NCBI RefSeq assembly: GCF_021869535.1
Contig: NW_026262701.1
Span: 110,484,001 to 110,548,000, forward strand
Origin: Mytilus californianus
Taxonomy: Eukaryota
Direction of reading: 5' to 3'
DNA length: 64,000 nt
The translations under genes and the position numbers were made by a program. This document shows positions 4,791-40,925 of this stretch, one piece after another. Every line of letters begins with the position of its first letter. Positions within the stretch are counted from its first letter, which is position 1. The notes under the pieces are model-generated. The model was given only the letters and a program-made list of their open reading frames with translations. It was not told where the DNA came from and ran no database searches.

Positions 4791-4874
4791 AACATTATCA
4801 GGATATTTATCAATGTTCTCTGTACATGTTTTACTTTTACTAAATATATGTTTATGTGGCGTTGAAATATTTAC

Positions 4875-14530: not shown

Positions 14531-15302
14531 GTCATTTTCGTTCTTACGCTATCTTATGTTTTAAGTTTTGGGCTTTCCAGACTTTCGTTTACGGTCGAAC
14601 TGACGAAGATCGTGTGCATGGAAATAACATTCATTTTTGTTTTACTTTTCAAAATATTTCTTGAAACACGAAAAATGTTATTGCCTTGAATTTCTGTTAT
14701 CCCTCAAAAGTAAATTTAACTGCTAATGATTATAGTAACTTTTCGCCTTATAGCATTTCACTTGTATTTAACACTAAAATCTTGATTTGGAATCATGAAA
14801 AAACTGTTTAGGTGGAGCAAATCACAATTTATCAATTTTTCGATATGGTAAATTTGAACGCTGTACAGTTTATGACTCTTGGTCGGAAGAACAAGTTAAT
14901 GATGTGCTTCGATGCCTTTTCTTCACTAAAATTACATCTTCTATTTTCTTTAACCGTTGAACAGCTGAATATACCTTGTCAAAAACCTCAACATTCACTA
15001 GATTCTGTATATTTTCCTTTAAAAGAAAAACATAGTTATCCCTCTGAAATCGTTAATTTTTTAACACTTAAACTTATTTAAAAAAAGTATTGTTTATCTC
15101 AATCTAGAGTTGAATTGAAATTTTTGGCAATCGGCTTAATGTAAAATTTGTAAATCAAATCATGCTACAGTTTCTCGACACATTTGAATGTAATATGTTT
15201 CATTTTCCTATGAAATTATGAATCATACCTTCGCGTAACAAAAATTAACGAAAATTTCTATGTGCCCAAACAAAGCAATGGAAACATCAATCAAAACATA
15301 TA

Positions 15303-15427
15303 TATCGTATTAAAGAAATTGTATACAACTATAAAAACATCGATATCGTACTAAAGAAATTGTTTACAACTATAAAAACATCGATATCGTACTAAAGAAA
15401 TTGTTTACAACTATCAAAAAATCGATA
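15303..15427. repeat. 41-bp tandem repeat x3
   Basis: Unit tatcgtactaaagaaattgtttacaactataaaaacatcga, with atcgta at 15304, 15345 and 15386. Confidence 0.9.
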
Positions 15428-15984
15428 GAAAGATTCAATATATCAAATAAATTTGTTAATCAGTCAACATAATTTTTTGTAAGTATACCTTTAGTTTTTC
15501 CAGATTTTTTCTCTCTGTTTGTACGCTTTGCACTATATCTGATGTAATTTCACATGCTTGACTAGTTTGTAAGATTTCTATAATTTGCCTAAAAATTATA
15601 ATGATAAATAACTGTTTATAACATTATCTTTTGAATAACTTTCATTTATATATTACAGGGAAATTTACTGAGTAACGCGATTGTATGGTTCTACTAGTTT
15701 TTCAGGAACCCTTTTGTACCACTTGAGTTCATTTCCTGTTTTAATGGGGTTCGCTTGCTCAATCTTTTTATTTTTCTGTGTAGCAACTCCTACTGCAAAG
15801 TTAACGATGTTTTAATGTATTCTTTCATGATCCTCACGTGTATCCGTATTTCCCTGTTAAGTGTGATTTTAAAGTTTATTTGTTATTTTTGTTTCAGAAT
15901 GTCATAGGGACTCTTGCTAGATTTACATTGTACATGTATATGCATATGATAGTCAAAACAACATATTGTCCCCTTCCCCTACTA

Positions 15985-16290
15985 GAGAATTACCAGCCCA
16001 GTAGTCAGCACGTTTGAGCTGACATGACATATGATATGTTCATTTTCTGTAAATTACCTGTTGACAAAATGGTGAAATATTCAAAACATTAAGGGTTTTC
16101 TACCCCAAATATGGATCGCCTGATCCGTATTTGGCAGAACTATTCGGAATTTTTGGTTATTAATGCTCTTTAACTATGTACTTAATTGGTCTTTCCAACT
16201 GTTTTATTTCGACCTCACTGATGAGGTTTATGTAAACAAAAAGCGTGTCTGGCGTACCAAATTATAAGCCATCTATCTTTGATGAATTTT
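15985..16290 (+). mobile_element. Retrozyme-like repeat with mutated hammerhead core
   Basis: Collinear with 33970-34310; CTGATGA at 16218-16224 but G12 of GAAA changed to A. Confidence 0.65.
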
Positions 16291-18170
16291 TAACGTGTTA
16301 GGAGAACGTAATGATTTTTGCGCGCAAATGTAATACACCGAGAAAAAACAGATACTTAAGAAATTTGTCATGCCTATGTTAAGATGTTTAAATTGATAAA
16401 AAATAGAAAAAGGGTTAAATTTGTTTTAAATATGGGTTCTCAAAAAGTAATTATGTGCTAAAATCCTGTCATTTTGTAAAATGTAATCGAGTGACGCGCA
16501 TCTAGTTTCACTGTCACATAAAATTGAATACAGACAATGTCAGTACTGAAAGAATAAAAAATAATAGCCTCTTAAAATAATGTAACTCATCTTCGTTCGA
16601 GTTTGGTTGTAATCAAAGGAAGTTGGCGCGGTCATTTTCTGTAAATTTACTGCTTACAAAATGATAAAATCATTCGAAGCAATTGGTTTTTTTTCTAACA
16701 AGGACTAGATGGCCTATTCTAGATTTTGCACAACTTTTTAAGAAATTTTTGTTCTCAATGCTCTACAACTTCATATTTGTTTTGGCAATTCAACCGTTTT
16801 GATTCGAGTTCGACATACTAAAACATATAAACTTGGCATCTTTGGTAACTTTTCACCATCACTATTAAGTGATAAAGATAATCTTGCAAAAATCAATCCT
16901 TTTTTATCATTACTTCATATTCATTGTTGAAAATAATTTGTGAACAAAACGGATTAATAAAAGAAGCATTTTAGTAATACAATAATTGAAAATGTTTTTT
17001 GACACAAAATTTTTATCGAACTCCAGCGCACTAATGATGTGTATACTGAGGATATTCGCTTCTTTCTTTTTCATGTAACTCCTTCTATAGACAATACACC
17101 AGACAGGTTCTCTCAGCAACTCCAATATTTATCAATGTTTTTTTAAACATACAATTCAATTACACCTCTGACAAACATCTTAAAATTCTTGAAAATTCTT
17201 CTGCATTTTTGTACAATTTAAAATTCATTTTTCCCATAATAAATCTTGATGAGCTTTTACCTTTTATTAAAATTAAAAGATATGCTTTTTTTTTTTGGCG
17301 AAAATATAGAATTGGCAAATGCTGGCATCTTTAAAGAATAGACAATATCTATATACTAAAGTTTAATGTATGAAACATTTTCTTCATTTTGAAAAAAAAA
17401 TTGTCATTTTTATTTCTGCTCCGAACTCTCTTAACACAATTATTATATCTCAAATGCTGAAAAAAGGATTAAATATTTCATTCAAATCACTTACGACTGA
17501 ATATCACACGACTTTTCCTCCAGTTCCTCTATTCCTAACTTATCAAGCTGAGACAAAGATCTTAGTACTATAAAATACACATAGCACATTAACCTATTAT
17601 TAACGTATATACTTATATAGAGTTATTTATTTTTAGAATGATAGATCATTCGTTTGAAGAAACAACCCGGACGATATAAAGTTTCAATTAAATGTGCTTT
17701 AAGGCATAAAATAATGACCTGTGTAAGGTCAAATTGCAGTTTGTTAAAACATTTAATTCATTTAATTCATTTAATAGTAATCGTGTGTTGTTCAAATTGG
17801 GATATTCTGTACAATTTTCCATCTTAAACATTCTTGAAAGGTTTTAGGCAGAAACAATCCTTTCCTCTATTTGTTAGATTAGAAATAAAATCCTTGTAAA
17901 TTTAAAAAAAATAATTTGCTTTTCCATGGTTCAAATGTTATGAAACCAGAGAAAGAACATAGCACCCCCTTTCATAAATATATAATAAATAACTTATCAA
18001 ATGACTTATATTTTTCATATACATATTTGTCATCGTCATTTGCAAGTGGAAGCAATGGCATTATATTTTCAGAAACCTACGGAATTGAACAGAAACTGTA
18101 TATGGAACTAAGCAACTTATATTTTTGTCACATTCTGCATTAACATTTTGATAAATTGTACCAAAAATAA

Positions 18171-18241
18171 TCATGTTGTTGCGCTGATTAAAATCCAAAG
18201 AGAGATTAATATAAAGAGCAAACAGTATGACCAAATATGAC
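18171..18241 (-). CDS. DED-protein paralog B, exon 8: hydrophobic C-terminal tail anchor and stop
   Basis: Strong acceptor tttccttcttattttatAG; phase 1 gives GHIWSYCLLFILISLWILISATT followed by TGA (18171-18173). Confidence 0.65.
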
Positions 18242-18533
18242 CTATAAAATAAGAAGGAAACTTCTAAAGGCCAAAGCAAGTTCATATTTTAGCTTTTGTA
18301 AATTTATAATTCATATCCTGAGAATTAAAACATGTTGAATCATGAACAATACCGAAACATTAACTGCAGGAAGATGTTCCTAAATTGGCATTTTGCTCTG
18401 CTCTTGAAATTGGTCAACTTTGCGTTAAAAGTCAAACTTCACATTTTTGTTGGTTTTTTTTTTCTTCTTTTTTTTTTGTTGGTTTTTGCTGTTGTTTTAC
18501 AGTTTTAAGTACTGCATAGTTAAAAAAACTTAC

Positions 18534-18560
18534 CATCTCCTCTTGAGTACAATAACGTTT
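18534..18560 (-). CDS. DED-protein paralog B, exon 7 (27-nt micro-exon)
   Basis: Acceptor tttattttgtAG, donor G|GTAAGT, phase 1-1, ETLLYSRGD. Confidence 0.6.
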
Positions 18561-18880
18561 CTACAAAATAAACACAGACATGAGTACAAAGCTGAGAAAA
18601 ACTGGCTACAAGTTACATAGAAACTTTCATAAACGTGATTGAATTATATTGCATATTCAGTCAAGCAATTCTTCAGCTGACGTGTTTTAAGAGATATATT
18701 CTAAGATATATAATAAATAAATGCAATAGTAGTACACCGCTGTTCAAAAGTCATAAATCGATTGAGAGAAAACTATCTTCTAACATGACTTTTATAAGAA
18801 AACGGTTGATATAATGATTTCGCACTACATTATATCCACATTTCGATGTGGTTTTTTTTTTATTAGTTTATTTAGATTAC

Positions 18881-19018
18881 CTTTACATCCATATTCTGAA
18901 ATTCTGTGTCTAGTTTCTCCAAAGTTACTTTCATCAACAATGTTTTGAAGTTTACAGATAATTTCTTCTCTTTCCGTTTCACATTTTTCAGCAGTGTCCT
19001 TAAGGTCTACTAAAGCAT
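18881..19018 (-). CDS. DED-protein paralog B, exon 6 (duplicate of exon 5, coiled coil)
   Basis: AG/GT bounded, 138 nt, phase 1-1, open: DALVDLKDTAEKCETEREEIICKLQNIVDE...; 18/30 identical to the start of exon 5. Confidence 0.75.
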
Positions 19019-20718
19019 CTGAAATATAAATATGCTGAAATTACATATCATTTTCGTTTAATATATATGTGACCAGCCATGAGATTTTCAGGATTATGGA
19101 GGTACCACAGTCACAATGAGTTTTTTGCCTTTTTATGAAGTATACATAGATTCAAAACAACATGACAAGTTATTTTGCTAGATTCTGCAAAATAACAGAA
19201 TTATGTTCATTTTTGTTAATTTAGATTTTATTAAAAAATTTCATCTTTTTCAGTTTTCCCCATATATTTTCATCTATTATGGTTATCTTTGAAATATCTC
19301 ATATTTTTTGTTGTTGTTTATTTTTCTTTAGGGGGCGGGGGGGGGGGGCAACTTAAGATTTTTTATATCTATATCATCCATTCGTTTGCCATAACAACAA
19401 TGTAGCGGAATCTGAAATCTAAATAATAATGAGTTAATAATAAGGACTTAACCATCTTTCCTTCTTAAGGAAAACAATATTAATACCAAGATATTTTCCC
19501 TTTTGATGTGAACACTGAGATTTACTCCAAAAACTTGGTTTTCATGCTGCAATATTTAGTAGTCATTAATTAGAGAAAAATATAAACACTGCACTTTGAA
19601 ATGCCTACAATAATATAAAATTAATTTTCAGGCCCCTTTGAGAATTAGTTTCAATTCAGATCAATGCAATGAAATCTTAAAGATAAATTGTGTGAATTTA
19701 GAAGCCGATTCTAAACTGGATTTTTACCTTAATTATTAATTTTACGTACAAAATCTACTTGTCTTTTATATTAAATATAAAATTCAAATTTCCAAAAGTC
19801 AAGAAAAAATTAAACTGTTTTACCGCATGATATACTAGTAATTGGACATCCAATAACAGGTGCCCTATTACGTTACTTGACTTTACATCGACGTTTTCTC
19901 ATTGTGACGTTCACCGCCATAAGCCTGGAAATGTGATGGTGGGTCACATATCTATCAGCGTGGTCTGGAATTGCATGGTCAAGTACTCTCAGTATGTCCG
20001 TTGGTAAACCGTCGTTAATATAAAAATAAGTAGTAAAATGGTTACTAGGAATGACGATCGCTACTCATTTTAATCATCATTTTAATAAATAAAGGTTTAC
20101 CTTCAAAACACAAGATATAATTAAAATGAAATAGTTCTAAGAAGGTATGTCTTTTCATATATACTTTTGATTTGACTATTCCCTTTGTACATTAGATAAC
20201 AGTTCTGTCTAATGATTTCCATATTTTAATTGATACCTATAATTAGTTAAGGAATAACAACACGTGTTACCGATGTTAGTGCGTATGGGATGCATGTAAT
20301 TCTGGAATTCGTTCGACACCCAAAAGTTTGAAAGTCAAAATATAAAATATATGAGAAGTTCAAAATCAACAGTGCTTTAACAAAACAAACAAAACTGTTT
20401 ACAGTCAACTTTTCCTGATCGAGTTGCGAACATTCAGGTATAAAATATTAGTCATCAGTAAGGCTTGATGACAAAAGTTAAGGAGGCCAAACATAAAAAG
20501 TCCTAAATAAATAAAATAGGCAAATATATTCAGATCAAATTTGACCGTGACATTTGCAATTGTAGTTATAGTACAATTGCACAATTCATTAACTAAAATA
20601 CATTTATAATATATAATTTGAACGAGTCAGTTCCGAGGTTACAATTTGACAATGTTATGCAATAATATGAGTACCATCATATGTAATGACATGCAATAAA
20701 AAAAATTATAAACACTAC

Positions 20719-20883
20719 CTTTGCAGAAATTTTCCGACGTTACAATATGAGCTTTTTCAATGACTTTGTTTAATTCAGAACATTTCTCGTCATATTCGTC
20801 AATAATATTCTGAAGTTTGCGAGTAATTTCATCTCTTTCTTCTTCACATATTTCCACGGCATACCTTAATTCTAGTAAGGCAT
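20719..20883 (-). CDS. DED-protein paralog B, exon 5 (coiled coil)
   Basis: Acceptor cttttacttttcAG, donor G|GTAGTG, 165 nt, phase 1-1; DALLELRYAVEICEEERDEITRKLQNIIDEYDEKCSELNKVIEK. Confidence 0.8.
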
Positions 20884-21471
20884 CTGAAAAGTAAAAGATC
20901 GTACTAATATATTAACTGATCAAAATGAAAAGTGCTCATTTTTCTTTTCTTGATGGTTATGTTTCTAATTTTGTTTTACTTTTATGAAAGTGTCATGGGA
21001 TGCATAGAAGCTTGGTAAATAAATGATTTTCTATCCTCTCTGGTTTTGTATTTCGAGTTGTTTCACTCACAGTTTACATTTACCACTCACCCCCAGTTTT
21101 TGGTGGGGTTCGTGTTGCTTAGTCTTTAGTTTACTATGTTGTGTCATATGTACTATTATTTGTCTGTTTGTCTTTTAATTTTTCGCCATGGCGTTGTCAG
21201 TTTTTTTTTCGATCTATGAGTTTGACTGTCCCTCTGGTATCTTTCGTCCCTCTTTTTTAACACTGCCTGTTTTTTTAAGTATTTGCAGAACATGAATTAG
21301 GACAAAGGTATATGATGAAGATGTACAGGAGTGCATTGGTGAATGTATTGTGGAGTAAATTATGACCATTATATGTGGCCTACAATTGCTTATATCCACT
21401 TCATGTGAACCATGGTGGATAGTTGTCTCATTGACAATCATACCATATCTCTTTATTTTTTATATATGTAA

Positions 21472-22583
21472 GACTCAGATCGACGTCCGATCTCTAATCG
21501 ACGTCCGTTCCTTAAATCGACGTCCAATCTGACGTCACAATAAAATAACATTCCAATTCGACGGCCGATTTTATGTTCCTCTAATCGACGTCTTTTTTGT
21601 GGTTCTCAAATCGACGTCCAATATTTGGCTTCCCTAATCAACGTCCGTTTTCTTGACTTGTCGCAGTGAAATCACAACTTTATTCAAGGGTTGGTTGAAT
21701 TTAAAACTTAAAAAGTTGTTAAAAAGTCCAAATCGTAAAACTTTTAACAATTGGCTGTACGTTTTTATTCTTTCTATTGTTTCAGTCTGTATACTGCCCT
21801 CCGGATGTCTTATCATTATCTTTGTTTTTGGCCTTTGGTTGTTGTCTCATTGTCGTACAATGTATATAGATATAAGAAGATGTGGTATGCGTGCCAATGA
21901 GACAACTCTCCATCCAAGTCATAATTTGTAAAAGTAAACCTTTACATGTAAAAGTACGTCCTTCAACACGGAGCATTGGCTCACACCAAACAGCAAGCTA
22001 TAAAGGGCCCCCGAAATGAGTAGTGTAAAGCTATTCAAACAGGAAAACCAACGGTCTAATCTATATAAAAAAACGAGAAACGAGAAACACTTATGAACCA
22101 CATCAACAAACGACAACCACTGAACATCAGGTTCCTGACTTAGGACAGGTGCATGTCATTTATTTATATGAAAAAGGAAAAAATCAACAACGTAGAAGAT
22201 AAACGTCTTTCACCAAAATATTAATATGCTATTACATGTAATTGTAATATGATGTTGATGATTGTCTTATTGTCATTTTCTAATATTTGTCGTTTTATTT
22301 TAATTAAATATAAGACAAAGAATGTAGTTTCTGTAAGCTACATCACAAAATGACAAAACGATACAGAAAATATAAACACAGATCAATTTAAAAATAAATC
22401 ATTCAATGAAATCGCGATGAGAGTCTCCTCATCGATCGGACGTTGTATATGTGATTTATTACGTAACATTGGACGTCGATTAGAGGGTTAAAATATTGAA
22501 AACTGATTTGAGAACGTGACGTCAGAGTTGGACGTCGATTTGAGGAACGGACGTCGATTAGAGATCGGACGTCGATTTGAGTC
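21472..22583. mobile_element. Foldback-type TIR element with ATCGACGTCC subterminal repeats
   Basis: About 68-bp near-perfect inverted ends (GACTCA[G/A]ATCGACGTCCGATCTCTAATCGACGTCC...); CpG-rich; SINE-like insertion inside; no clear TSD. Confidence 0.75.
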
Positions 22584-23622
22584 CAACAAATATATAATAA
22601 GAAACTAACAATACCCACCTTACTTGCAGTTAATGACGAAATCAACTTTAAAAACCAAATTCATCTTATTATATGTTTGCTGAACTTTTATAATAAAGTA
22701 GTTTAAGCGTGTTATTACATCAGAGCGGGCTAACAACATAAGTGTTTTCATGAAGCTTGACTTCGATCTGTTCTAATAATCCCGTATTGTTGTTGTAGGC
22801 TCGTCCATAAATGTCAACTGAATGAACCAAATGGTAATTTAAAACGGCAATTAAGTATTAAATCTATTGTATGTCAATTAAAGTGCCTTTCATCTTAAGT
22901 CAATAAGACAAACGAAGACAGCAACAACGGTTGGAATACTTACTTCGGGCACATTTTATATTATTCATGTTATGTAAGTAGTCAATCCTCCCCTGTAGGT
23001 TAAATGAGACAGAAGTGTAATAAAAATCGATGACAATCAGTTGGAATGGACATTACTCGTCAGGGCGGTACATAATGTAAAACTACTCAAATAAATAATA
23101 AGACACTAACAATACCCATCTTACTTGCAGTTAATGAAATCAACTTTAAAAACCAAATTCATCTTATCATATGTTTGCTGAACTTTTATAATAAGAGACT
23201 TATCTTATTTATTAACCACTATACAGTTGAACAGATTTAAAGTCAAATCATCATAAACAACATACAGATATGAGCTTGTGAAATTTAGATATTGGTAGGA
23301 TATTGAATCTAGAGAGTAAAATAATGAATTGTAGATAAACATAATCTTTCTATAAATATCTAAGATTTTCTCAAGAGTTTATATCAAAAGCAACCTTGAC
23401 GAGATGCATATTTCTTTTTCAGCGGCTCATATTGTTATCTTTTTGTACTGCTTTAGAATGTACTACGTGCTGTATAGAGTATGCTTTTCTTTGCTTGTGT
23501 TTAATCTCCTGATTGTTCATTAAGTTAGTACAAAGTTTCCTGGTTATCCTTTTGATTAATATAAATGGTGGATATTCACGTTTTCCCCTATTTGTTCTAT
23601 TTATATTCAAAACATGGTATTA

Positions 23623-24218
23623 GGTAGCAATATACAGAAAAAAATTCTTTATTTTCTTACAAATTAAGCTTACTGTTTGTGTCATATATGTGCATATGTA
23701 TGTAATCAATATCTTTCATAGATTTGGTTTCTAGTAGTTAAAAAAATTAAATATAATTTCTTGTTGGTGTATCCATGGCAACAATCTGCATTTATTTGCT
23801 GTAAAATACAACAAAAAGGGGTTCGAAGATGTCACATATGTCCCCAAAATTTGGCCAAAAGTAGAATTCCAATCCCCTTGAGCGATGTCATTCCTGAAAC
23901 AATTTACATGCATTTATTAAAATCATGGTCTTTCGACTCATTTTTTCCGTAAAATTACGTCAAAAAAAGTATAAAAAAAAAGTGTTTGTACACATTACAA
24001 CAATTTCTAGACCTATGGCCGGTCTGGATATGAATATAAAGACTGTCAAACAGAAAATAGCCAATAAAAACAATTATGGTGTTCACATAAATCCACTTTG
24101 AAGGCTTAATTAGTCATCAGCTATCAAAAAATGAATTTTATTGCACAATAACTTTCATGTATAAAAAATCCACTTGGGCCGAAATGCGAGACCACACTCC
24201 TAACTGTGTATTGCTACC
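23623..24218. mobile_element. Non-autonomous TIR element, TTAA-type target (Kolobok-like)
   Basis: GGTAGCAATA[T/C]ACAG 15-bp TIRs; TTAA on the right and ATTA on the left. Confidence 0.6.
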
Positions 24219-24476
24219 TTAAGTACAAAAATGGCAAACGGACCCCTGGAGTCGTCCACTACGATCCAGTTAAATATGATATTATGCAAAGAAAATATGA
24301 CTGTCTTAGCAAAACACAAAGTTAAACGAATTCTAAACCGTTTACTTTTAAGAGATATAACATATATTTCGTTAGCATTAGATTTTTGCGTGACTCACAT
24401 AAATCAGTGCATTAATCAATGTGGTTTATTCGGCGGCTAGTACATGCATTAATTCTTATGAATTGTATATAGCTAC

Positions 24477-24635
24477 CTGTAATATTCGATATGTATTCTT
24501 TGGTGTTTTCTTTTTCTTGTTCAATAGCGAGCTGATAGTTCTCAACATCCATCTGCAGATCTCTGTTTTGTTGTAGAATTTTTTTTACAGCTGCATCTTT
24601 ATCAAGAGTTGGTTTTTCTTCGTCCTCTTTAAAAT
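24477..24635 (-). CDS. DED-protein paralog B, exon 4 (coiled coil)
   Basis: AG/GT bounded, 159 nt, phase 1-1, open: DFKEDEEKPTLDKDAAVKKILQQNRDLQMDVENYQLAIEQEKENTKEYISNIT. Confidence 0.8.
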
Positions 24636-25113
24636 CTGGAAATATCGAGATAATTCGTTTTATACCTGTAGGGATACCAAAATTAAGAAGAATTTCCTTT
24701 CTTTGTACAGTTATGATTCGGGAAACATAAAAACATTGAGGTATTTTGAATATTATAGACTGTAAATCAAAGAGGGAAGTATTTTAATTAATATTAAAAT
24801 TTCTGATATTGATAAATTTTTATAAAGTAATCATTTCTAATTACTATAACTGGAATACCAATTATTCGAGAAAAAACAGTTTCAATATTTATGATCCTAT
24901 TCATACTGTGAATTCTGAAAACTTGAATCAATTATCTTTCTTCGGAAAATGCTGTACCAAGTCAGGATTATGACAGATGTATTTCATTCGTTTTGTTGGC
25001 TGTAACGTTTGATTTCTTCAGATTTCATGGCTTTCCCTTTTTGAATTTACCTTGGAGTTCTGTATTTTTGTTAATACTTTTCTATCTTTAATTCAAATTA
25101 CAGCAATGATTAC

Positions 25114-25395
25114 CTTTGCAGTCTATAAGTAGTTCGTCTACTTTAATCCGATCTACCCCATGCAAACATAATCTTTTTTTCTCCTGGTCTCCTAAGTTCA
25201 AGAGAATCGCAATACATACTTCTGGTATCATGATGGTAATATGAATGCTGCTTGTCGGTTCTATACCATCAATAATGATGTGATGCATTGGACAGCGTAG
25301 TAAAACTGACATGGCCGCTTTTAATGCTTCCAAGTCATCTGAACTAAATAGATCAGTTCCTCTGATATGAAAATCCACATGTCTGTAACCATTAA
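25114..25395 (-). CDS. DED-protein paralog B, exon 3 (putative TRADD-N-like alpha/beta domain)
   Basis: 282 nt, phase 1-1, open; LEALKAAMSVLLRCPMHHIIIDGIEPTSSIHITIMIPEVCIAILLNL resembles the helix-strand-strand-helix pattern of TRADD-N-like domains (pattern recognition only). Confidence 0.8.
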
Positions 25396-25443
25396 CTATC
25401 AGCAACACAGAGAAAAATAAGTTGCATGTGAATTATATCATTG

Positions 25444-25472
25444 ATATATATATGTGTGTGTGTGTGTGTGTG
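25444..25472. repeat. (AT)n(TG)10 microsatellite
   Basis: Directly visible. Confidence 0.9.
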
Positions 25473-26019
25473 TATACTTGGATAGGTTCAGGTATAAAGA
25501 TAAGATAAGATAACTTTATTAGCACCAACACATAAACAATAAATGGTTATGGCAACAAAATACAGATAAACTACAATAACATATGTACAATTAAGGAGTG
25601 ACAGCGGATAAGTATGAGAAAGATATAAATAAAATCTAGTACCTTTTGACAATGAGTGTCTCACAAACAAGCATTCATTCAAATAATTTACAACAAGTTT
25701 TAATACTGTTGGAGAATTACTATTTAGAATTGATATAAGCAAGTTATAAGATAAAGAATATAATTTCATTAGAACATTATTTAACTTTTTAATGAGGTTT
25801 TAAATGATTAATGGCGGATATATGTTGATTAAGAATTTGATGCTTGAAATAGTTGTCTAGAGAATCGCATTTTGAGCTATAGATATCCTTGATGGGCTTT
25901 AAGTATGTTGATTGGTTGTTTTCTCATTTACGTAACTCCGAATAGCCTATATATCTTTTCATTTATATTTGGCATACATGTTGCATTCCCACACAAAAAA
26001 TGTCATCTAGTAACATAGG

Positions 26020-28648
26020 TTTCTCTAGACATGAACACTGAAAATCAAGTAGACCATGTCTGCATCTCCAAGATGTTAAGGAGAAGTTTACAAGATGTTC
26101 CAGTTAAAAGAGGAGCAGACGTTGCCTCTGGCCATCACTTTATTGTGGCAAAAGTAAAATTGGAGTTAAAGAAACACCAAAACAACACATTAACAGGTAA
26201 ACGATTTAACACGTCAATGTTGGCCAACAAAACAAAGAATTAAAAAATCGCTTCTCAACATTTCAGAATGCAACAGAGGAAATAGTTACAATAGAAGATC
26301 CCTTGCAAGAGATTAAAGAAGCTTTCACGACAGCTTGCGAAACATCAGCTGGTTTGAAAAGTAGGAAACATCAGGAATGGATATCATCAGAAATACTTGT
26401 AAAAGTGGAAGAAAGGAAAAATATAAAAAAAATATCCTGAACAACAGCAAAACAAGATCAGCAAAACAAACAGTCTCAAGAGCGTACACTATAGCTAACA
26501 AGGATGTAGGAACTGTGCAAGGAAAGATAAGAGGGCCTTTGTAGACAAACTAACAGCAGAAGCAGAAGTGGCAGCCAGAGCAAACAACATCAAAGCTCTA
26601 TATGACAACATAAAACTGTTCACTCGGAAATATCAGAAAGGAGGTAGACCGGTAAAAAGCAAAGAAAGGATACACTAAACACACATGAAAAGCAAATGAA
26701 ACGATGGGTGGAGCATTTCAATAATGTGCTAAACCAAGAGCCATCGGTAAATAAAGCTGACATTCCACCCTCTGAAAATCTTTTGGCAGTTGACTGTAAA
26801 AGATCCTCTAAAGGAGAAATCAAGAAAGCCATAAAAATGCTGAGGAACAACAAAGCTCCAGGTCCTGACAACATGCCTGCATAAGCACTGAAAGCAGACA
26901 TTGAAACATCAACTGAAATGCTATATAACCTGTTTTGAAAGATCCGGGAAAAAGGAGAGGTCCCTCTAGAATGGAAAGAAGGACAATGGTATAGCTTTCA
27001 AAGAAATGCAATTTAAGCATTTGTGACAACTATAGATGAATAATGCTACTATCAGTTCCATGGTGATTGAGATTATAACACAATGTTGACTGCTGTACCT
27101 CTATTTTTGACATCTTTACCTATAATATCTGTTTGTTTTGTTCACATATTGTTGTCAATATAATGGAATTTTATGCGACTGTCATACAAGTGAGAGGTTT
27201 AGCTAGCTTTAAAACCAGGTTTAATCTACCATTTTCTACATAAGGAAATGTCTGTACCAAGTCAGGAATACGACAGTTGTTTTCCATTCGTTTGATGTGT
27301 TTGAGCTTTTGATTTTGCCAATTGTTAAGGGACTTTCCGCTTTGAATTTTCCTTGGAGTTCGTTATTTTTGTTGTTTTACTTTTCCAGGGAAAGTTTTAA
27401 ATAGAGTAATGTTAAATCGACTCAAAAATGCAATAGACGAAATTCATCGTAACAACCAAGCTGGATTTATAAAAACAGATCATGTGCAGACCAAATAGCA
27501 ACTTTACGCATCATCCTCGAACAATCACAAGAGTTCAATTCATCGCTCTTTTCTGTTTTTGTCGACTTAGCCAAAGCCTTTGACAGCTTAGATAGAGATG
27601 TGTTGTGGCAGTTGATGAGACACTATGGCATTCCTGAAAAATGTATTACTATCATCAGAAATACCTACACAGGAATGCAGAGCAAGATCATCCATGAAGG
27701 TCAACTAACAGAGGCCTTTGATATAACAACTGGGGTAGGACAAGGCTGTCTCCTTTCACCTATGCTTTTCCTCCTGGCGGTTGACTGGATCATGAAGCAA
27801 GCCACAGACGGCAGAAGAAACGGTATCCAATGGACCATGTTCACACAGCTGAATCCTAGACTTTGCCGATGACATTGCCTTGCTGTCCATCAACCACAAA
27901 CAAATGCAGGACAAACTAGCACAGGTTGAAAGGAGAGCTGCGGAAACAGGCCTATCTATCAACTACAAAAAGACCAAAGTTTTAAAGTCAAACACAAGGA
28001 CCCTAACAAGTCTGATGGTTAACACCCAACCTTTAGAAGAAGAGGATTCATTTACATACCTTGGAAGCTTAGTGGACAATCTTGGTAGCTCAGATAAAGA
28101 TGTAAAAACCAAAATTGGCAAAACTAGAACTGCATTTAATATGATGGGCACAATTTGGAAAGCAAGAAACATCACTCTAAAGACCAAAGTACGCTTGGTC
28201 AATTCCAATATAAAAACATGAGACCTGAGAGCTGAGACTTGGAAAACAACAAAAAACATGCTTCAAAACATTAAGTCTTCATCAACAATTGTCCAGGCGC
28301 ATCCTTAACATCAGAAGGCATGAGAAGATATCAAACCAAGATATGTGGGAAAAGACCAACCAATCCCCAGTTGATGAAGAGTTGAAAAAGAGAAAGTGAA
28401 GATGGATAGGGCACACACTGAGGAAGCCAAATAACAGCGTTACAAGGCAAGCCTTGCAGCGGAACCCACAAGGAAAGCGTGGCAGGGGCAGACCAAGTTA
28501 CAACTGGAGAAGAAACGTTGCAGCCGAGATGGAGAAAGAAGGGTACAAGTGGCATGATCTGGAGAAGCTAGAAAAAAATAGAACAAGGTGAAGGAATATC
28601 GTTACTGGCCTATGCTCCACAAAGGGGCAACAAGATTAAGCAAGTAGG
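26020..28648 (+). mobile_element. 5'-truncated RTE-like non-LTR retrotransposon (pseudogenised), antisense in intron 2 of paralog B
   Basis: APE C-terminus (NQVDHVCI...RGADVASGH), KAPGPD, FVDLAKAFDSL, GVGQGCLLSP, LDFADDIA; stops and frameshifts; short repeat-like tail. Confidence 0.9.
27061..27384 (+). mobile_element. About 325-bp SINE-like element inserted in the LINE RT
   Basis: Splits LLSVP|GKV; (TT)CCA is repeated at both junctions; same family as 14325-14530. Confidence 0.75.
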
Positions 28649-29648
28649 CATACATTGTTGACCAACACACAATAACATATTCATCTTTTGAATTTTCAAG
28701 TATCAACTTCTGAACTTTGTAAAAATCCGATATAGCATTGGCAATAATCAAGCAATACTCGAGCTAAGAGCAGAGTGTGTTTTTATCGAATATTCGAATC
28801 ATAGTTTTTCCTTGATAAATAATGAATAAAGGCAACAGTAGTATACCGGTGTTCAAAAGTCATAAATCGATTGAGAGAAAACAAATCCGGGTTAAAAACC
28901 AAAACCAAGGGAAAAACATCAACCACAAGATGAAAACAAATGACACTTTTGGTGTAAAGTATTTTATACTGAATTGTGTTTTTTCTAGGTAAAAAACCCA
29001 ATAAATGACTCATTTGGTTGCAGTTTTAGTTGGTATTATTATGGTTTTTTTTTCTAAATTTAGCTTATTATAGCTAGTTCTTGGTGTTCAATTCTTTGGG
29101 AATATATATATGCTAAGATCACCAAATTAATCACGTATAACCAAAATATACCCTATGCCTGGGGTAGAAAACACATAGTGTTTCGAATAATTTAACGCTT
29201 TATATTCAGCCAAAAATGAACGTATCAATAATATTTCAGATCAAAACAAAAGTGCTTACTACTGGGCTGCTGATACCTTCGGGGATAAAACGTTCACCAG
29301 CAGTGACATGTAACACATTGAAATGTATTCGACATTATAAACTTCTTATATTTTATGTTTGCCACGATTTAATTATACATATACCAGATGCCTCTCTGAC
29401 TATAATACTATGTAGTCAAATTTATTACCACTCTGCATGCAATGAGAAATTTCAATATTTTAATTTAGTTTAAAACATGTTGGAAATGATATTTTTGGAC
29501 AATGTGTTTTTTGGTTTAACTATTAAATTGGTGATCTTAACATGTATATTCACGCAAATATTAAACTCCTTTGATTTGAAGCTTTGTGAAATGTTACCGG
29601 AAGCTTGTACAGTTATCATGAATACCCTTCAGAAACTTTCTATCTTAC

Positions 29649-29867
29649 CTGGATGTTCCGAAGGAACAAAGAAATGAAGTGTTTTATCCTGTGAATTACA
29701 ATATTCCAAGAAATCCTTGTACAAATCTTTCCTTCCCAAATGCCATATCATTGCTTGTAATGGCGCAAGATTGTATTTAGTCAGAATCCTGCGTTCTTTC
29801 AAATGAGTAAAAAGACTCATGTAATCTGTTATCTTCTCTAAAACATTTTTAGTCAAACCACCTTCGC
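29649..29867 (-). CDS. DED-protein paralog B, exon 2
   Basis: Acceptor tattgcAG, donor G|GTAAGA, 219 nt, phase 1-1; GEGGLTKNVLEKITDYMSLF...LQAMIWHLGRKDLYKDFLEY. Confidence 0.88.
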
Positions 29868-30359
29868 CTGCAATATAACCCTAAACATGACAAAGCAGTA
29901 AAGATTCGAACAATTTATAGCAATCTTGTATAAAATAATTTATATTTCTAGCAGCAAAGGTTTACTAGCATATTTAGAAAACTATTTCTTTGTTGTGATA
30001 TTTTAAATACTGTAACAATTATAATATAAAAATGTTCTTTGTAACTTTTTAAGTTGCATTTTCTGTTGCACAACTATCTAAATGCATTGACTGTGAAGTC
30101 AGAATTTCTTCTTTTTTTTCTTTAAAAAAAGTGTTCTGTAATTTGCCGATTTTATCTAACCCGAAGATTCTAAATACAGGTTCTAAGAGTCGTCCTGGGA
30201 GTTGTTTTTGGATGTGTTTAATCGTATTTATGATTACTTCCCACAAAACATTTGTGTTTCTTTACGTTTCATTAATTTAACTTGTACTTATGTCGAGTCC
30301 GTTCATCTGCATTTGCTTTAAGTTACTTATGATAAAAGACCGTTTATCGAGTAGAACCT

Positions 30360-30500
30360 ATTTTGTCATATAGCTCTTTAACTGTTTGGGTTCTTATACA
30401 TCCTTGGCTTTCATATATTCGACTTTGAGCGTTTCTGATGAATTTAAATCCAGAAAAGCGCTTCGGATGCATAAAATTCTAAAGTGTGGTTTCATTTTCT
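30360..30500 (+). mobile_element. Second hammerhead-like repeat family (retrozyme-like fragment)
   Basis: gcgttt-CTGATGA-atttaaatcca-GAAA-agcgct-TC-ggatgc at 30429-30470; decayed copies at about 1005-1056 (plus) and 12375-12420 (minus). Confidence 0.5.
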
Positions 30501-31352
30501 ACGATTCATTTGAGAGTAAGTTGTAAGAAACTGCTACAATTTTTGTATTTGTTTTTCATTTTGTAGTAAACGTGTTGTTTTTGCAAATAATGCTGAGTAT
30601 CTAGCAAAATGGTTCAACATCACAAATAAAAACAACGGTAAAACGGTAAAAGGAGTCAAATGTTTAAAGTGTCTAAATGAAAGTGAAAGGCGATAGTAGT
30701 GTTCTTCAAATATTTATGACAGTAGTTCACACAATTGATAATAAACAAAAGAGGAGGAGACATTTACAGCGAAATGCGGATCAGACGTGGCAGGAACACT
30801 GAAGGAACTTGATATGATGCAAATGAATAATTTCCTAAGCAAAGAATGCAAAATACAACATATTTTCATAAGGTGCAGGATGGACGCTGAAAGATAATAT
30901 ACATTGAGTTGAGACATCAGCAAACACGACATAGAATAGGCTTATCCTATAAGCAACTGAACCATGTCACTCACATATAATTCTTTTGACATTTTTTTTT
31001 TTAGTAATTTATTAAATTATTATTTTTCCAAAAAATTTTGAGCGTCAGATATCTGGTTTATAATTTAGTCCGCAAGACTCGTGTTTTGTCATATAAGACT
31101 CATCATTGACACTCAAATCAAAACACTCAAAAGTTCAAATCAAATAGAAGAAATTGAAGAGCATTGGAAACCAAAACATTAATCCATCGCTCATTAAAAA
31201 AGGATTAATCGTCCGATATCCAAAGTATAATGTATGTGGTTTCTCCTGGTTATTCTAATAAGAACTGACAGCAAGAAATTTAAAGAAGATATAGTACAGA
31301 AGAATAAAAGAACTCAGTGAGTCTTGCTTTACCTATGTATAATCTAAAATAC

Positions 31353-31488
31353 CTGCGCAACAGAATTTGAGTTTTTTAAAGTCTTCCTCTGTTAGCTGAT
31401 CTCCAATCTTTAGTAGAAACGTGTGAAGTGCATAATCATCCGATGGAATGATCCTTATATCATCCAATGTAAGTTTGTTTGTATCCAT
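31353..31488 (-). CDS. DED-protein paralog B, exon 1 (start codon, N-terminal half of DED)
   Basis: ATG at 31488; MDTNKLTLDDIRIIPSDDYALHTFLLKIGDQLTEEDFKKLKFCCA; donor G|GTATTT; 136 nt, phase 1. Too short to appear in the ORF track. Confidence 0.85.
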
Positions 31489-34310: not shown

Positions 34311-34462
34311 ACATTTTTTCATCAAGGTACCTTTCATAATCTTACTATGCAATATGGGTCTTGCTTTTTGTTGAAGGCCTACGGTGATATATAGCTGTGT
34401 ACATCCAAGTCCTTATGTCTTTCTTGTTTTTTTGTCTCAATGGCAATCACATCTTTTATATC

Positions 34463-35450
34463 GATATACAAATATTCCACAAGACGAAGGAATAGCAGCG
34501 TGTGAAGAGGTATGGAACAATCGCAGTGACAAAAATCCTCCAACTGAGTGCCTTGTTACACTTCTACAACTAATGCTGGAGAGCAACAACTTCTCTTTCA
34601 ATGACAAACACTATCTACAGATGGACGGCACTAGTATGGGTACAAAAATGGCCCCGTCATATGCCAACATATTTATGGGCCAACTTGAAAAACGCCTCTT
34701 GGCTTGTGCTCCATACCAGCCATTATCATGGTTTTGATTTATTGGTGATATTGATTTTAAATGGACAGATTCACAAGACCATCTGAATGAATTTCTTGAA
34801 CACTGTAACTCTTTCAACCATTCAATTAAATTTACACACAAAACATGAAAGGAGAAAATAACTTCCTTGATACTACGAGTTACATCCAGAACGGAACTAT
34901 GATAATGGATCTTCATACGAAGAAAACAGACAAACATTAATTTCTCTCTCCTAAAAGTTGCCATCCCAGACCCTGCTCCGGTGGTATCCCTTTCAGTCAG
35001 GCATTGCGAATCAAGAGAATATAATCAACTGAAAATAAGCATCATGCTATACTTGGATAACTACGTTTAACATCTAGTTGTTCGAGGATACAATAACAAC
35101 AGTATTGATACTGCTTTCGAAAAAGCAAACACTATTAACCGCATAGAACTTCTGGAGTACAACGATACGAATAAAGGAGTCAACAGAACACCTCTTGTAT
35201 TCACTTACCATCCTGATTTTGAAAATGTTTCATCCATTGTTCGAAAGCATTGGAACATTATAGAAAATGACTCCAATTCCTCACCACCAGTCATGGCCTT
35301 CAGAAGAAATAAAAACATCCGTGACAAATTAGTGACAACTATTAACAAAGCAACCTACTCCACCTCCTGTTGCTACAAACATATTAGGAGAAGGAATTCT
35401 TTATGTTGTAAGACTGCCAATACTAGCAGTTCTTTCACCAGCTCCTTGAT
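34463..35450 (+). mobile_element. Canonical Penelope/Poseidon-type RT fragment (pseudogenised)
   Basis: [46 protein letters not shown] (decayed YIDD) and FRRNKNIRDKLV linker; stops and frameshifts. Confidence 0.85.
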
Positions 35451-38700: not shown

Positions 38701-40925
38701 CAGATAGTTGGTTACAGATGATATCACATGTTTCGATGCTACTGATTTTGTGTAGATAGTTAGTTAGATGATATCACACATGTTTCGATGACACTGATTG
38801 TGTTTGGATAGTTGGTTACAGACGACATCACACATGTTTCGATACCACTGATTGTGTGTAGATGGTTTGTTACAGACGATATCACACATGTTTCGATGCC
38901 AGTGATTGTGAGTAGATAGTTGGTTACAGATGATATCACACACGTTTCGATACCACTGATTGTGTGTAGATAGTTTGTTACAGATATCACACATGTTTCG
39001 ATGCCAGTGATTGTGTGTAGATAGTTTTTTACAGATGATATCATACATGTTTCGATACCACTGATAGTGAGTAGATAGTTGGTTACAGATGATATTATAC
39101 ATATTTCGATGCCACTGATAGTGAGTAGATACTTTGTTACAGGTGTATACATGTGTTGATACCACCGATTGTGTGTAGATAGTTTGTTACAGATGATATC
39201 ATACATGTTTCGATGCCACTGATTGTGTGTAGATAGTTTGTTACAGATGATATACATGCGTTGAAACCACTGATTGTGTGTAGATAGTTTGTTACAGATG
39301 ATATATACATGTGTTGATACCACGGATTATGAGTAGATAGTTGGTTACAGATGATATCATACACATTACCGATACCACCGATTGTGTTTGGATAGTTGGT
39401 TACAGATGATATCAGACATGTTTCGATGCCAGTGATTGTGTGAAGATAGTTTGTTACAGATGATATCACACACGTTTCGATGCCACTGAGTGTGTGTAGA
39501 TAGTTTGTTACAAATGATATCACACATGTTTCGATGCCACTTATTGTGTTTAGATAGTTGGTTACAGATGATATCACAAATGTTTCGATGCCACTGATTT
39601 TGTGCATATAGTTAGTTAGGTGATATCATACATTTTTCGATGCCACTGATTGTGTGTAGATAGTTTGTTACAGATGATATCACATATGTTTCGATGCCAC
39701 TGATTGTGTTTAGATAGTTGGTTACAGATGATATCACATGTTTCGATGCTACTGATTTTGTGTAGATAGTTAGTTAGATGATATCACACATGTTTCGATG
39801 CCACTGACTGTGTTTGGATAGTTGGTTACAGACGATATCACACGTTTCGATGCCACTGATTGTGTTTGGATAGTTGGTTACAGACGACATCACACATGTT
39901 TCGATACCACTGATTGTGTGTAGATGGTTTGTTACAGACGATATCACACATGTTTCGATGCCAGTGATTGTGTGTAGATAGTTGATTACAGATGATATCA
40001 CACACGTTTCGATACCACTGATAGTGAGTAGATAGTTGGTTACAGATGATATCATACATATTTCGATGCCACTGATAGTGAGTAGATAGTTTGTCACAGA
40101 TATCACACGTTTCGATGCCACTGATTGTGTGTAGATAGTTAGTTAGATTATATCACACATGTTTCGATGCCACTGATTGTCTGTAGATAGTTTGTTACAG
40201 ATATCACACATATGTTTCGATGCCACTGATTATGTATAGATAGTTTGTTACAGATGATATCACACATGTTTAGATACCACTGATTGTGTGTAGATAGTTT
40301 GTTACAGATGATATCACATGTTTCGATACCACTGATTGTGTGTAGATAGTTTGTTACAGATATCACACATATGTTTCGATGCCACTGATTATGTATAGAT
40401 AGTTTGTTACAGATATCACACATATGTTTCGATGCCACTGATTATGTATAGATAGTTTGTTACCGATGATATCACATATGTTTCGATACCACTGATCGTG
40501 TGTAGATAGTTTGTTACAGATGATATACATGTGTTGATACCACTGATTGTGTGCAGATAGTTTGTTACAGATGATATCATACATGTGTTGATACCACGGA
40601 TTGTGTGAAGATAGTTGGTACCATACATATAGTGCTTTTACTGATTATTGTAGATAATTAGTTAGATTGTATTATACATTTGTCGATACCACTGATTGTG
40701 TGTAGATAGTTTGTTACAGATGGTACCATACACGTGTTGATACCACGGATTTTAGGTAGAAACATGGTATTGTATATGTGTCGATACTACTGATTGTGTG
40801 TAGGAAGTTGATTACAGATAGAATCATGTGTTGCTTCCACTGATTATTGTATATAGTTGGTACCCGATGGTGTCATACATGTGTTGATTCCAGTGCAGCT
40901 ATGTAGATAGATGGTAACAGATTGT
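35770..40925. repeat. About 5.1-kb minisatellite of 50-54-bp units with internal block duplications
   Basis: Consensus gatgatatcacacatgtttcgatgccactgattgtgtgtagatagtttgttaca; identical 156-aa pseudo-ORFs recur at 36485, 37967 and 39137. Confidence 0.95.

What the first reader, a model, noticed from the sequence alone, without database searches (positions are those of the whole stretch)
18171..31488. Hidden 8-exon gene: DED + TRADD-N-like + coiled coil + C-terminal membrane anchor
Seen: eight AG/GT-bounded exons join in frame into a 398-aa protein (136+219+282+159+165+138+27+71 nt), although the ORF track shows only fragments of it. Residues about 17-105 have a DED signature (LLKIGDQLTEEDFKKLKFCC...LQAMIWHLGRKDL, with the RxDL motif). 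Exons 4-6 are charged and heptad-like. The protein ends in about 18 hydrophobic residues (IWSYCLLFILISLWILISATT-stop). Established: DEDs recruit caspase-8/FADD-type partners, and tail anchors place signalling platforms such as MAVS and Bcl-2 proteins on mitochondria or ER. Inference: exon 3 is a TRADD-N-like domain. The protein would then be an organelle-anchored, oligomerising death or immune adaptor with no enzymatic domain, an architecture I do not recognise from characterised proteins.
Basis: partly seen in the sequence, partly recalled or inferred. Interest (0 to 1): 0.82.

Follow-up and report, generated by a model that had tools for sequence, protein, structure and literature searches.

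The report
Mussel DED–TRADD-N adaptor gene, no membrane anchor
This is a real, expressed and already annotated California-mussel gene for a soluble death-effector-domain plus TRADD-N adaptor protein, a known bivalve immune/cell-death gene expansion; the membrane anchor that made it look unusual comes from two wrongly chosen exons.

Summary
They match, residue for residue, RefSeq XP_052060111.1 (uncharacterized protein LOC127700602 isoform X1, Mytilus californianus, 481 aa). So the gene is real but not hidden.

- RNA contigs from three studies, with raw stranded RNA reads supporting two of the joints, join exon 6 to 18534-18560, then 17495-17567, 15489-15588 and 14870-15016.
- The true C-terminus is hydrophilic, helical and conserved in paralogues.
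- None of 69 relatives of 200 aa or more has a C-terminal hydrophobic segment.

The domain calls hold:
- DED: Pfam 53.8 bits against a cut-off of 35.9; nearest solved relative is caspase-8 DED1.
- Exon 3 is a TRADD-N domain of the NCOA6 type. It has an RRM-like fold (pLDDT 91.8), its best structural match is the NCOA6 TRADD-N cluster (TM 0.79), and it keeps the conserved "uS" turn.
- Exons 4-6 are predicted as long helices.

DED + TRADD-N modules with variable C-termini were described as bivalve lineage-specific expansions by Kaur et al. 2021 (PMC8195603). Verdict: an ordinary new member of a known kind, with low interest.

The parts
31353..31488 (-). Coding exon 1 (ATG at 31488): N-terminus and the first third of the DED
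   Evidence: GT donor. Pfam DED profile positions 2-24. Identical to P0090 residues 1-46.
29649..29867 (-). Exon 2: rest of the DED, including the RxDL motif (R91-K-D93-L94)
   Evidence: AG/GT boundaries. Pfam DED positions 29-79. 100% match to P0090 45-118. Full-length DED scores 53.8 bits against a cut-off of 35.9.
25114..25395 (-). Exon 3: complete TRADD-N (NCOA6-type) RRM-like domain, residues 119-212, with the uS motif at S167-S168
24477..24635 (-). Exon 4: linker and start of the long helix (predicted coiled coil)
   Evidence: AG/GT boundaries. Matches P0003 208-255. Helix 225-312 in the model.
20719..20883 (-). Exon 5: coiled-coil exon
   Evidence: Joint 19018>20719 in raw RNA reads (3 reads) and in contigs of X1 and X7.
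18881..19018 (-). Exon 6: coiled-coil exon, an internal duplicate of exon 5. Present in the M. californianus, M. coruscus and M. galloprovincialis orthologues and absent from the paralogues.
   Evidence: About 55% amino-acid identity to exon 5 and a nucleotide alignment over about 90 nt. 46-residue insertion in alignment A2. Joints 18560>18881 and 19018>20719.
18534..18560 (-). True exon 7: a 27-nt micro-exon (ETLLYSRGD).
   Evidence: Reproduces P0090. Joints 17567>18534 and 18560>18881 in RNA contigs of X1 and X7. Motif conserved in P0003 and P0086.
17495..17567 (-). True exon 8 (VLRSLSQLDKLGIEELEEKSCDIQS)
   Evidence: Joint 15587/8>17494/5 in 2 raw RNA reads and in contigs of X1, X7 and X5.
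15489..15588 (-). True exon 9: conserved C-terminal helical module (QIIEILQTSQACEITSDI...)
   Evidence: tblastn with P0003.. Joint 15015/6>15488/9.
14870..15016 (-). True last coding exon (ENIQNLVNVEVFDKVYSAV...SSDQES, then stop). The 3' UTR continues below 14870.
   Evidence: The X1 contig extends 392 nt beyond 14890.
18565..18591 (-). Its GT donor lies inside the acceptor tract of the true micro-exon.
   Evidence: No joint at these coordinates in four RNA runs. Sequence read.
18171..18241 (-).
   Evidence: Depth 0 over 18090-18289 in X21, X1, X7 and X5, and no joint. Absent from both RefSeq isoforms.

Best explanation
The locus is Mytilus californianus LOC127700602. It is a 10-coding-exon, minus-strand gene (31488 to 14870) for a soluble 481-aa protein.

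Domain order:
- N-terminal death effector domain (about residues 22-101).
- TRADD-N domain of the NCOA6 type (119-212, encoded exactly by exon 3).
- About 130 residues of long helix, probably a coiled coil (225-351), lengthened by an internal exon duplication.
- A short disordered Ser-rich linker.
- A conserved helical C-terminal module of about 90 aa, with no assigned family.

It belongs to the bivalve lineage-specific expansion of proteins that pair a constant DED + TRADD-N module with a variable C-terminus.

Shown here: the gene structure, its expression, the domain identities and the absence of a membrane anchor.

Inferred mechanism: a cytosolic adaptor or regulator of apoptosis or innate immunity.
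- The DED would join FADD/caspase-8-type DED assemblies by homotypic contacts.
- The coiled coil would dimerise or oligomerise the protein to raise avidity.
- The family-specific C-terminal module would be the input or output surface.
For: Gene model:
- Exons 1-6 plus 18534-18560, 17495-17567, 15489-15588 and 14870-15016 reproduce P0090 = XP_052060111.1 exactly.
- All five joints within the laid stretch are seen in RNA contigs; X1 and X7 each show all five, X5 (another organism) three. Two of the joints are also seen in raw RNA-seq reads.
- In the exon bins outside the repeat-containing ones (18690-19289) the reads' first mates all lie on the + strand, as expected for a minus-strand RNA.
- Spliced full-length ORFs of paralogues sit on transcript-sized contigs of 1.4-2 kb (P0003, P0086, P0088).

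DED:
- Pfam 53.8 bits against a cut-off of 35.9.
- Caspase-8 DED1 at E 1.9e-7 and FADD DED at E 0.007 among solved structures.
- RxDL is invariant in alignment A2.

TRADD-N:
- 84 relatives found, nearly all with the domain about 110-130 residues into a DED protein.
- 27 of 58 members hit PF13820 and 18 of 58 hit PF20694; best E 5.6e-6.
- The AlphaFold2 model has pLDDT 91.8 and a beta-alpha-beta-beta-alpha-beta order.
- Its best Atlas fold match is the NCOA6 TRADD-N cluster: TM 0.79, 97 residues aligned, rmsd 2.4.
- The Atlas feature search gave the same family.
- TRADD 1f2h scores Z 6.1, rmsd 2.8, 88 residues aligned.
- An invariant Ser, preceded by a tiny residue, sits in the beta2-beta3 turn. 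This matches the uS motif described in PMC8195603.

Coiled coil: helices 225-312 and 319-351 in the model.

Published class: DED + TRADD-N expansions in bivalves (PMC8195603).
Against: - No functional data exist for this protein or any close relative. Every database name is 'uncharacterized' or an automatic 'FADD'/'DED domain-containing' label.
- The window's own TRADD-N domain gets no Pfam hit at E <= 1. Family membership therefore rests on transitive and structural evidence.
- In the PDB, TRADD-N is only one of many RRM-like folds with Z 6-9.
- The full-length model has low confidence (pLDDT 57, only 10 sequences). The coiled coil and the C-terminal module are secondary-structure predictions only.
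- Partners (FADD, caspase-8, TRAF) were not examined.
- Joints between exons 1-2, 2-3, 3-4 and 4-5 were not seen directly. The single reads call covered only 14890-20889.
Confidence: 0.85

Rival explanations
1. One reading: a tail-anchored DED-TRADD-N-coiled-coil protein on mitochondria or ER, made by splicing exon 6 to 18565-18591 and then to 18171-18241. It could exist at least as a minor isoform.
For: Both segments have usable AG/GT sites and keep the frame. The resulting tail reaches a Kyte-Doolittle 19-residue mean of 2.27.
Against: - No joint at these coordinates, and zero depth over 18090-18289, in four RNA runs that cover the neighbouring true exons at 4-28x.
- Absent from both RefSeq isoforms.
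- The true downstream exons are conserved in orthologues and paralogues.
- None of 69 relatives has a C-terminal hydrophobic segment.
- There are 1189 chance completions within 1 kb, 54 of them hydrophobic.
- Caveat: contigs can drop rare variants, and only about 6% of the raw run was read.
Confidence: 0.02
2. The protein is a decoy or inhibitor rather than an activating adaptor. Like cFLIP, PEA-15 or viral FLIPs, its DED would cap or poison FADD/caspase-8 DED filaments, and the coiled coil would sequester partners.
For: - It has a single DED and no enzymatic or death domain.
- Its DED is most similar to caspase-8 DED1.
- DED-only regulators are established modulators of DED assemblies. This is background knowledge; reviews PMC4558505 and PMC11074299 were listed but not read.
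Against: Nothing in the sequence separates activation from inhibition. The conserved TRADD-N and C-terminal modules suggest more than a simple cap.
Confidence: 0.3
3. It has a DEDD2-like nuclear or nucleolar role. As a DED + TRADD-N protein it would act in the nucleus, as vertebrate DEDD/DEDD2 do, rather than at cytosolic signalling complexes.
For: - The N-terminal DED followed directly by TRADD-N is the same order as in DEDD2, according to PMC8195603.
- There is a short basic patch, KKRHR, near the C-terminus.
Against: - Pfam and Atlas place the domain with the NCOA6-type TRADD-N families, not specifically with DEDD2.
- The family is a lineage-specific, tandemly duplicated expansion, which is typical of immune genes and not of the single-copy DEDD2 orthologue.
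- No clear nuclear localisation signal was tested.
Confidence: 0.1

Closest known systems
Bivalve lineage-specific expansions of DED + TRADD-N proteins (Kaur, Iyer, Burroughs, Aravind, eLife 2021, PMC8195603)
   Same: The constant module of a DED followed by a TRADD-N domain, with a variable C-terminal region. The genes are expanded and duplicated in a sessile marine bivalve. Relatives found here carry Mab-21/cGAS-like, ankyrin or Toastrack-like C-termini, which matches the published pattern.
   Different: The paper describes Crassostrea; 'Mytilus' does not occur in its text. The main C. virginica expansion has an N-terminal extracellular region and a transmembrane helix, which this protein lacks. 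The C-terminus here is a coiled coil plus an unassigned helical module, not a known effector domain.
Vertebrate DEDD2/FLAME-3 (and DEDD)
   Same: An N-terminal DED followed by a TRADD-N domain and no enzymatic domain (architecture as stated in PMC8195603).
   Different: There is no detectable orthology. This protein has a long coiled coil and a mytilid-specific C-terminal module, and it belongs to a multi-copy family. Nuclear targeting was not tested.
TRADD (N-terminal TRAF2-binding domain, PDB 1F2H/1F3V)
   Same: The RRM-like beta-alpha-beta-beta-alpha-beta fold (Z 6.1, rmsd 2.8, 88 residues aligned) and the conserved Ser in the beta2-beta3 turn, which in TRADD contacts the TRAF2 MATH domain (PMC8195603).
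   Different: About 10% sequence identity. [quoted passage not shown] The classical TRADD clade is confined to vertebrates.
FADD / caspase-8 prodomain DEDs
   Same: A true DED with the RxDL motif. The best solved relative is caspase-8 DED1 (E 1.9e-7).
   Different: It has no death domain and no caspase domain, so it is neither FADD nor a caspase. Some relatives are nevertheless auto-named 'FADD'.
Tail-anchored signalling platforms (MAVS, Bcl-2 family)
   Same: Nothing remains in common once the gene model is corrected.
   Different: There is no C-terminal transmembrane segment. The most hydrophobic 19-residue window (1.89) lies inside the TRADD-N domain.

Membership tests
Death effector domain (Pfam PF01335) | Profile match above the curated cut-off over the whole domain | tested here: met
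   P0090 residues 22-101 match profile positions 2-79 of 82 at 53.8 bits against a cut-off of 35.9, E 2.4e-14. The separate exon peptides scored 22.5 and 30.8 bits.
Death effector domain (Pfam PF01335) | RxDL motif near the end of the domain | tested here: met
   R91-K92-D93-L94 is invariant in 10 orthologues and paralogues. It aligns with the RLDL of caspase-8 DED1.
Death effector domain (Pfam PF01335) | Six-helix bundle fold | tested here: inconclusive
   The full-length model shows five helices between residues 18 and 104, but pLDDT there is only 45-55.
TRADD-N superfamily (Pfam PF13820 NCOA6_TRADD-N / PF20694 TRADD-like_N) | Detectable sequence-profile relationship | tested here: inconclusive
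   The window's own domain has no hit at E <= 1. Among its homologues (phmmer E down to 6e-26), 27 of 58 hit PF13820 and 18 of 58 hit PF20694, with a best E of 5.6e-6. The individual hits that were examined fall below the cut-offs.
TRADD-N superfamily (Pfam PF13820 NCOA6_TRADD-N / PF20694 TRADD-like_N) | RRM-like two-layer alpha+beta sandwich with a four-stranded sheet and kinked helices | tested here: met
   The AlphaFold2 model has pLDDT 91.8 with elements E9-16, H24-38, E46-52, E56-63, H64-71/H75-83 (broken helix) and E86-91. The top Atlas fold match is the NCOA6 TRADD-N cluster at TM 0.79. TRADD 1f2h scores Z 6.1, but it is tied with other RRM-like folds.
TRADD-N superfamily (Pfam PF13820 NCOA6_TRADD-N / PF20694 TRADD-like_N) | Conserved uS motif (tiny residue + Ser) in the beta2-beta3 turn (PMC8195603) | tested here: met
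   S167-S168 of P0090 lie in the turn between E46-52 and E56-63 of the domain model. The Ser is invariant in 58 sequences.
Tail-anchored membrane protein | A single hydrophobic transmembrane segment within the last 30-40 residues of the expressed protein | tested here: not met
   The true C-terminus is ...KKRHRSTSLTCSSDQES. The maximum 19-residue hydropathy is 1.89, at residues 169-187 inside TRADD-N. The exons that would encode the tail are not in the RNA.
FADD | A DED followed by a death domain | tested here: not met
   No Death-domain hit in P0090 at E <= 1.
Coiled-coil oligomerisation region | Long uninterrupted amphipathic helix with a heptad pattern | tested here: inconclusive
   Helices 225-312 and 319-351 are predicted at pLDDT about 65-80. 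Pfam gives only weak coiled-coil-type matches. No dedicated coiled-coil predictor was available.

The most novel reading that the evidence does not exclude
The conserved helical C-terminal module of about 90 residues (exons 8-10; motifs CEITSDI and VFDxVYxAV) has no Pfam, PDB or Atlas match. It could be a new mytilid-specific sensor or effector-docking domain. That would give this tandemly duplicated DED-TRADD-N pair a pathway-specific role in mussel immunity or cell death. The lineage-specific duplication of a coiled-coil exon could tune spacing or oligomer geometry.
Probability: 0.2. Interest if true: 0.4.

Novelty: new member of a known kind. Interest (0 to 1): 0.15.

Why it matters
The main value is corrective. 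Short terminal exons chosen by eye in an AT-rich genome readily yield spurious hydrophobic 'anchors', and here that artefact created the only unusual feature of the finding. What remains is a well-supported Mytilus example of the DED + TRADD-N adaptor expansion, which had been described in oysters. The TRADD-N domain is encoded by one symmetric phase-1 exon, which fits domain shuffling. The protein also has an unassigned conserved C-terminal module. This is useful for annotating mussel immune repertoires, but it would not surprise a specialist.

Tried and rejected
- Word search with the 93-aa exon-3 peptide found only one unspliced 104-aa genomic ORF from a related species, because of the length filter.
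- Pfam on exon 3 alone, and on residues 112-215, gave no hit.
- A profile of the TRADD-N family against PDB sequences gave nothing significant.
- Foldseek against the PDB gave only generic ferredoxin-like and ACT folds at E >= 0.02, with no TRADD in the top 50.
- The C-terminal module gave nothing in Pfam, in an Atlas feature search or in a profile search against PDB sequences. NCBIfam gave nothing meaningful for the whole protein.
- Read-through of the exon-6 donor as an alternative end was considered. AATAAA signals lie at 18872 and 18864, and the in-frame stop is about 60 nt further on. No RNA support was seen: the contigs splice at 18881.
- Weak tblastn hits at 34.6-35.7 kb on the + strand were considered as a third DED gene. 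They were rejected because that region holds a reverse-transcriptase-like ORF and a satellite array.
- Earlier scan notes contained nothing about this gene.
- The spliced protein was never typed into a tool. All work used window references and the database protein P0090.

Full report
**Observation**

The window is AT-rich (about 30-36% G+C) and the feature lies on the minus strand.

The first six exons have strong acceptors (polypyrimidine tract plus CAG or TAG) and GTA-type donors, and exons 2-6 are all phase 1-1. For the 27-nt exon the enumeration already gave a second, equally legal choice at 18534-18560.

**Identity of the gene**

- A phmmer search of the exon-3 peptide against 1.84 billion representative proteins found 84 relatives. 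Most carry the domain about 110-130 residues into a longer protein.
- The best full-length relative, P0003 (429 aa), has a Pfam DED, the exon-3 domain and a coiled-coil region. It then has a soluble acidic C-terminus and no hydrophobic tail.
- tblastn of P0003 against the window found its C-terminal region on the minus strand at 15572-15459 and 15022-14882.
- A word search seeded with P0003 returned P0090. P0090 is 481 aa, NCBI XP_052060111.1, 'uncharacterized protein LOC127700602 isoform X1 [Mytilus californianus]'.
All of these have AG/GT boundaries.
- Isoform X2 (XP_052060112.1, 420 aa) lacks only the N-terminus and has the same C-terminus.

**RNA evidence**

Twenty runs from 13 studies hold exon 3. 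Most are transcriptome-sized contig sets, and one raw stranded RNA-seq run from the same study as a likely source genome was also offered. I laid that raw run (X21) and three contig sets (X1, X7, X5) on 14890-20889.

A single 1976-nt contig of X1, and contigs of X7, run through these segments in order:
- 14890-15015
- 15488-15587
- 17494-17567
- a 27-nt piece
- 18881-19018
- 20719-20886

The joints are 15015/6>15488/9, 15587/8>17494/5, 17567>18534, 18560>18881 and 19018>20719. All have CT..AC ends, which is GT..AG on the minus strand. Raw reads support 15587>17494 (2 reads) and 19018>20719 (3 reads). In the exon bins outside the repeat-containing ones (18690-19289), their first mates all lie on the + strand, as expected for a minus-strand RNA in a standard stranded library; that last step is inference.

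No joint involves 18565, 18591, 18241 or 18171. The 18090-18289 bin has zero depth in all four runs, while the true exons nearby have 4-28x contig depth. X5, from another organism, carries a 33-nt variant of the micro-exon.

**Why the tail is chance**

- Within 1 kb downstream of exon 6 there are 36 acceptors that could give a terminal exon, 100 open AG..GT internal exons and 1189 two-exon completions.
- About 5% of all stop-free stretches of 23 aa or more, in any frame of this window, reach a Kyte-Doolittle 19-residue mean of 2.0.
- The true protein's most hydrophobic 19-residue window (1.89) lies within the TRADD-N beta3/alpha2 region.
- None of 69 relatives of 200 aa or more has a C-terminal hydrophobic segment.

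**DED**

- The separate exon-1 and exon-2 peptides match the two parts of PF01335: profile positions 2-24 and 29-79.
- The full protein scores 53.8 bits against the 35.9-bit cut-off.
- Among solved structures the best matches are caspase-8 DED1 (E 1.9e-7), the FADD DED (E 0.007) and PEA-15.
- The RxDL motif (R91-K-D93-L94) is invariant across orthologues and paralogues.

**Exon 3 is a TRADD-N domain**

Sequence evidence:
- Pfam gives the window's own sequence no hit.
- The Atlas feature search put it next to a cluster carrying PF13820 NCOA6_TRADD-N and PF20694 TRADD-like_N (score 0.91, 187 shared features).
- In a 58-member alignment of the domain (A1), 27 members hit PF13820 and 18 hit PF20694 at E <= 0.1, with a best E of 5.6e-6. 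No other family recurs in more than two members.
- The individual hits that I inspected are below Pfam's cut-offs.

Structural evidence:
- AlphaFold2 with A1 gives a confident model (pLDDT 91.8, pTM 0.82) with beta-alpha-beta-beta-alpha-beta order and a broken second helix.
- The top Atlas fold match is an NCOA6 cluster in which 97% of members carry both TRADD-N Pfam families (TM 0.79, 97 residues, rmsd 2.4).
- Foldseek against the PDB gave only generic ferredoxin-like folds.
- The exhaustive VIA search lists TRADD-N (1f2h) at Z 6.1, rmsd 2.8 and 88 residues aligned. It is tied with Nup54, dystroglycan, MAD, SEA, ACT and RRM domains. The PDB therefore supports the fold, not the family.
- The invariant Ser (S168), preceded by S167, lies in the beta2-beta3 turn. 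This is the 'uS' motif that Kaur et al. give as the hallmark of TRADD-N, and in TRADD that Ser contacts the TRAF2 MATH domain (PMC8195603).

**Rest of the protein**

- The full-length model has low confidence (pLDDT 57, 10 sequences). It predicts one 88-residue helix (225-312), a second helix (319-351), a disordered Ser-rich linker (364-385) and four C-terminal helices (388-473).
- Exon 6 is an internal duplicate of exon 5: about 55% amino-acid identity and a nucleotide alignment over about 90 nt. It is present in the M. californianus, M. coruscus and M. galloprovincialis orthologues (96% and 89% identity) and absent from the paralogues.
- The C-terminal module has conserved CEITSDI and VFDxVYxAV motifs. 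It has no match in Pfam, PDB sequences or the Atlas.

**Context**

- The first two exons of a tandem paralogue lie at 6336-6190 and 5094-4873 on the same strand. They are 100% and 96% identical to P0086, a transcript-derived protein. The rest of that gene lies beyond the start of the window.
- Intron 2 holds a decayed non-LTR reverse-transcriptase element on the + strand.

**Comparison with what is known**

Kaur, Iyer, Burroughs and Aravind (eLife 2021, PMC8195603) describe lineage-specific expansions of TRADD-N proteins in Crassostrea and other sessile marine animals. In these proteins a constant DED + TRADD-N module is joined to variable regions. The paper also notes the same core in vertebrate DEDD2.

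The relatives found here fit that picture. Most are DED-TRADD-N-coiled coil. Others end in Mab-21/cGAS-like domains (P0057), ankyrin repeats (P0076) or Toastrack-like repeats (P0013).

The paper does not mention Mytilus. No functional study of this protein turned up in the two searches that were run.

**Mechanism**

This part is inferred. The protein is most likely a soluble adaptor or regulator:
- The DED enters FADD/caspase-8-type DED assemblies.
- The TRADD-N sheet binds a partner.
- The coiled coil provides oligomerisation.
- The C-terminal module is the family-specific interface.

Whether it activates or inhibits cannot be told from sequence.

**Verdict**

This is a new member of a known kind, of low interest.

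Noticed in passing
window 4873-5094 and 6190-6336, minus strand: First two coding exons (the DED) of a tandem paralogue. They are 96% and 100% identical to P0086, a 448-aa DED-TRADD-N-coiled-coil protein from a transcript-sized contig. Its remaining exons must lie beyond the start of the window.
   Followed up: partly
window about 26000-28600, + strand (inside intron 2): Decayed non-LTR retrotransposon lying antisense to the gene. The ORF fragments hit Pfam RVT_1 (E 3e-5 and 7e-4) and DUF6451, and are broken by frameshifts.
   Followed up: partly
window 18714-18773 (intron 6): A piece of about 60 nt with very high summed contig depth in the RNA runs (bin mean about 390-540x; over 1000x at single places). 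It has many different loose ends on both sides and several variant letters. This looks like an interspersed repeat (SINE- or MITE-like) that is transcribed from many other loci, not part of this gene's mRNA.
   Followed up: no
window 35783-40751: Satellite array of about 5 kb: a 54-bp unit in about 94 copies at 83% identity, with higher-order periods of 158 and 212. It explains the strong positive GC skew at 36-40 kb and the long repetitive minus-strand ORFs there.
   Followed up: partly
window 34384-34737, + strand: A 117-aa ORF with a reverse-transcriptase-like motif (…[23 protein letters not shown]…), probably another retroelement fragment. It accounts for the weak spurious tblastn hits of the DED protein near 34.6-35.7 kb.
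   Followed up: no
relatives P0057, P0076, P0013 (not in the window): Among proteins that share the exon-3 domain, P0057 is DED-TRADD-N-Mab-21 (a cGAS-like nucleotidyltransferase), P0076 carries ankyrin repeats and P0013 carries Toastrack (DUF4097)-like repeats. These are examples of the variable C-terminal regions of this expansion.
   Followed up: partly
window 18534-18560 as seen in run X5 (organism B): In another organism's RNA contigs the micro-exon is replaced by a 33-nt variant. This fits the 2-3 extra residues seen at this point in the M. coruscus and M. galloprovincialis orthologues.
   Followed up: no
window 122-266: A run of 145 N (assembly gap or masked stretch). It was left untouched.
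   Followed up: no
window 16305-16340: Raw RNA reads (8) and X1 contigs lie here with the opposite mate orientation and with loose ends leading into unrelated sequence. This is probably another repeat or an antisense or unrelated transcript inside intron 8.
   Followed up: no
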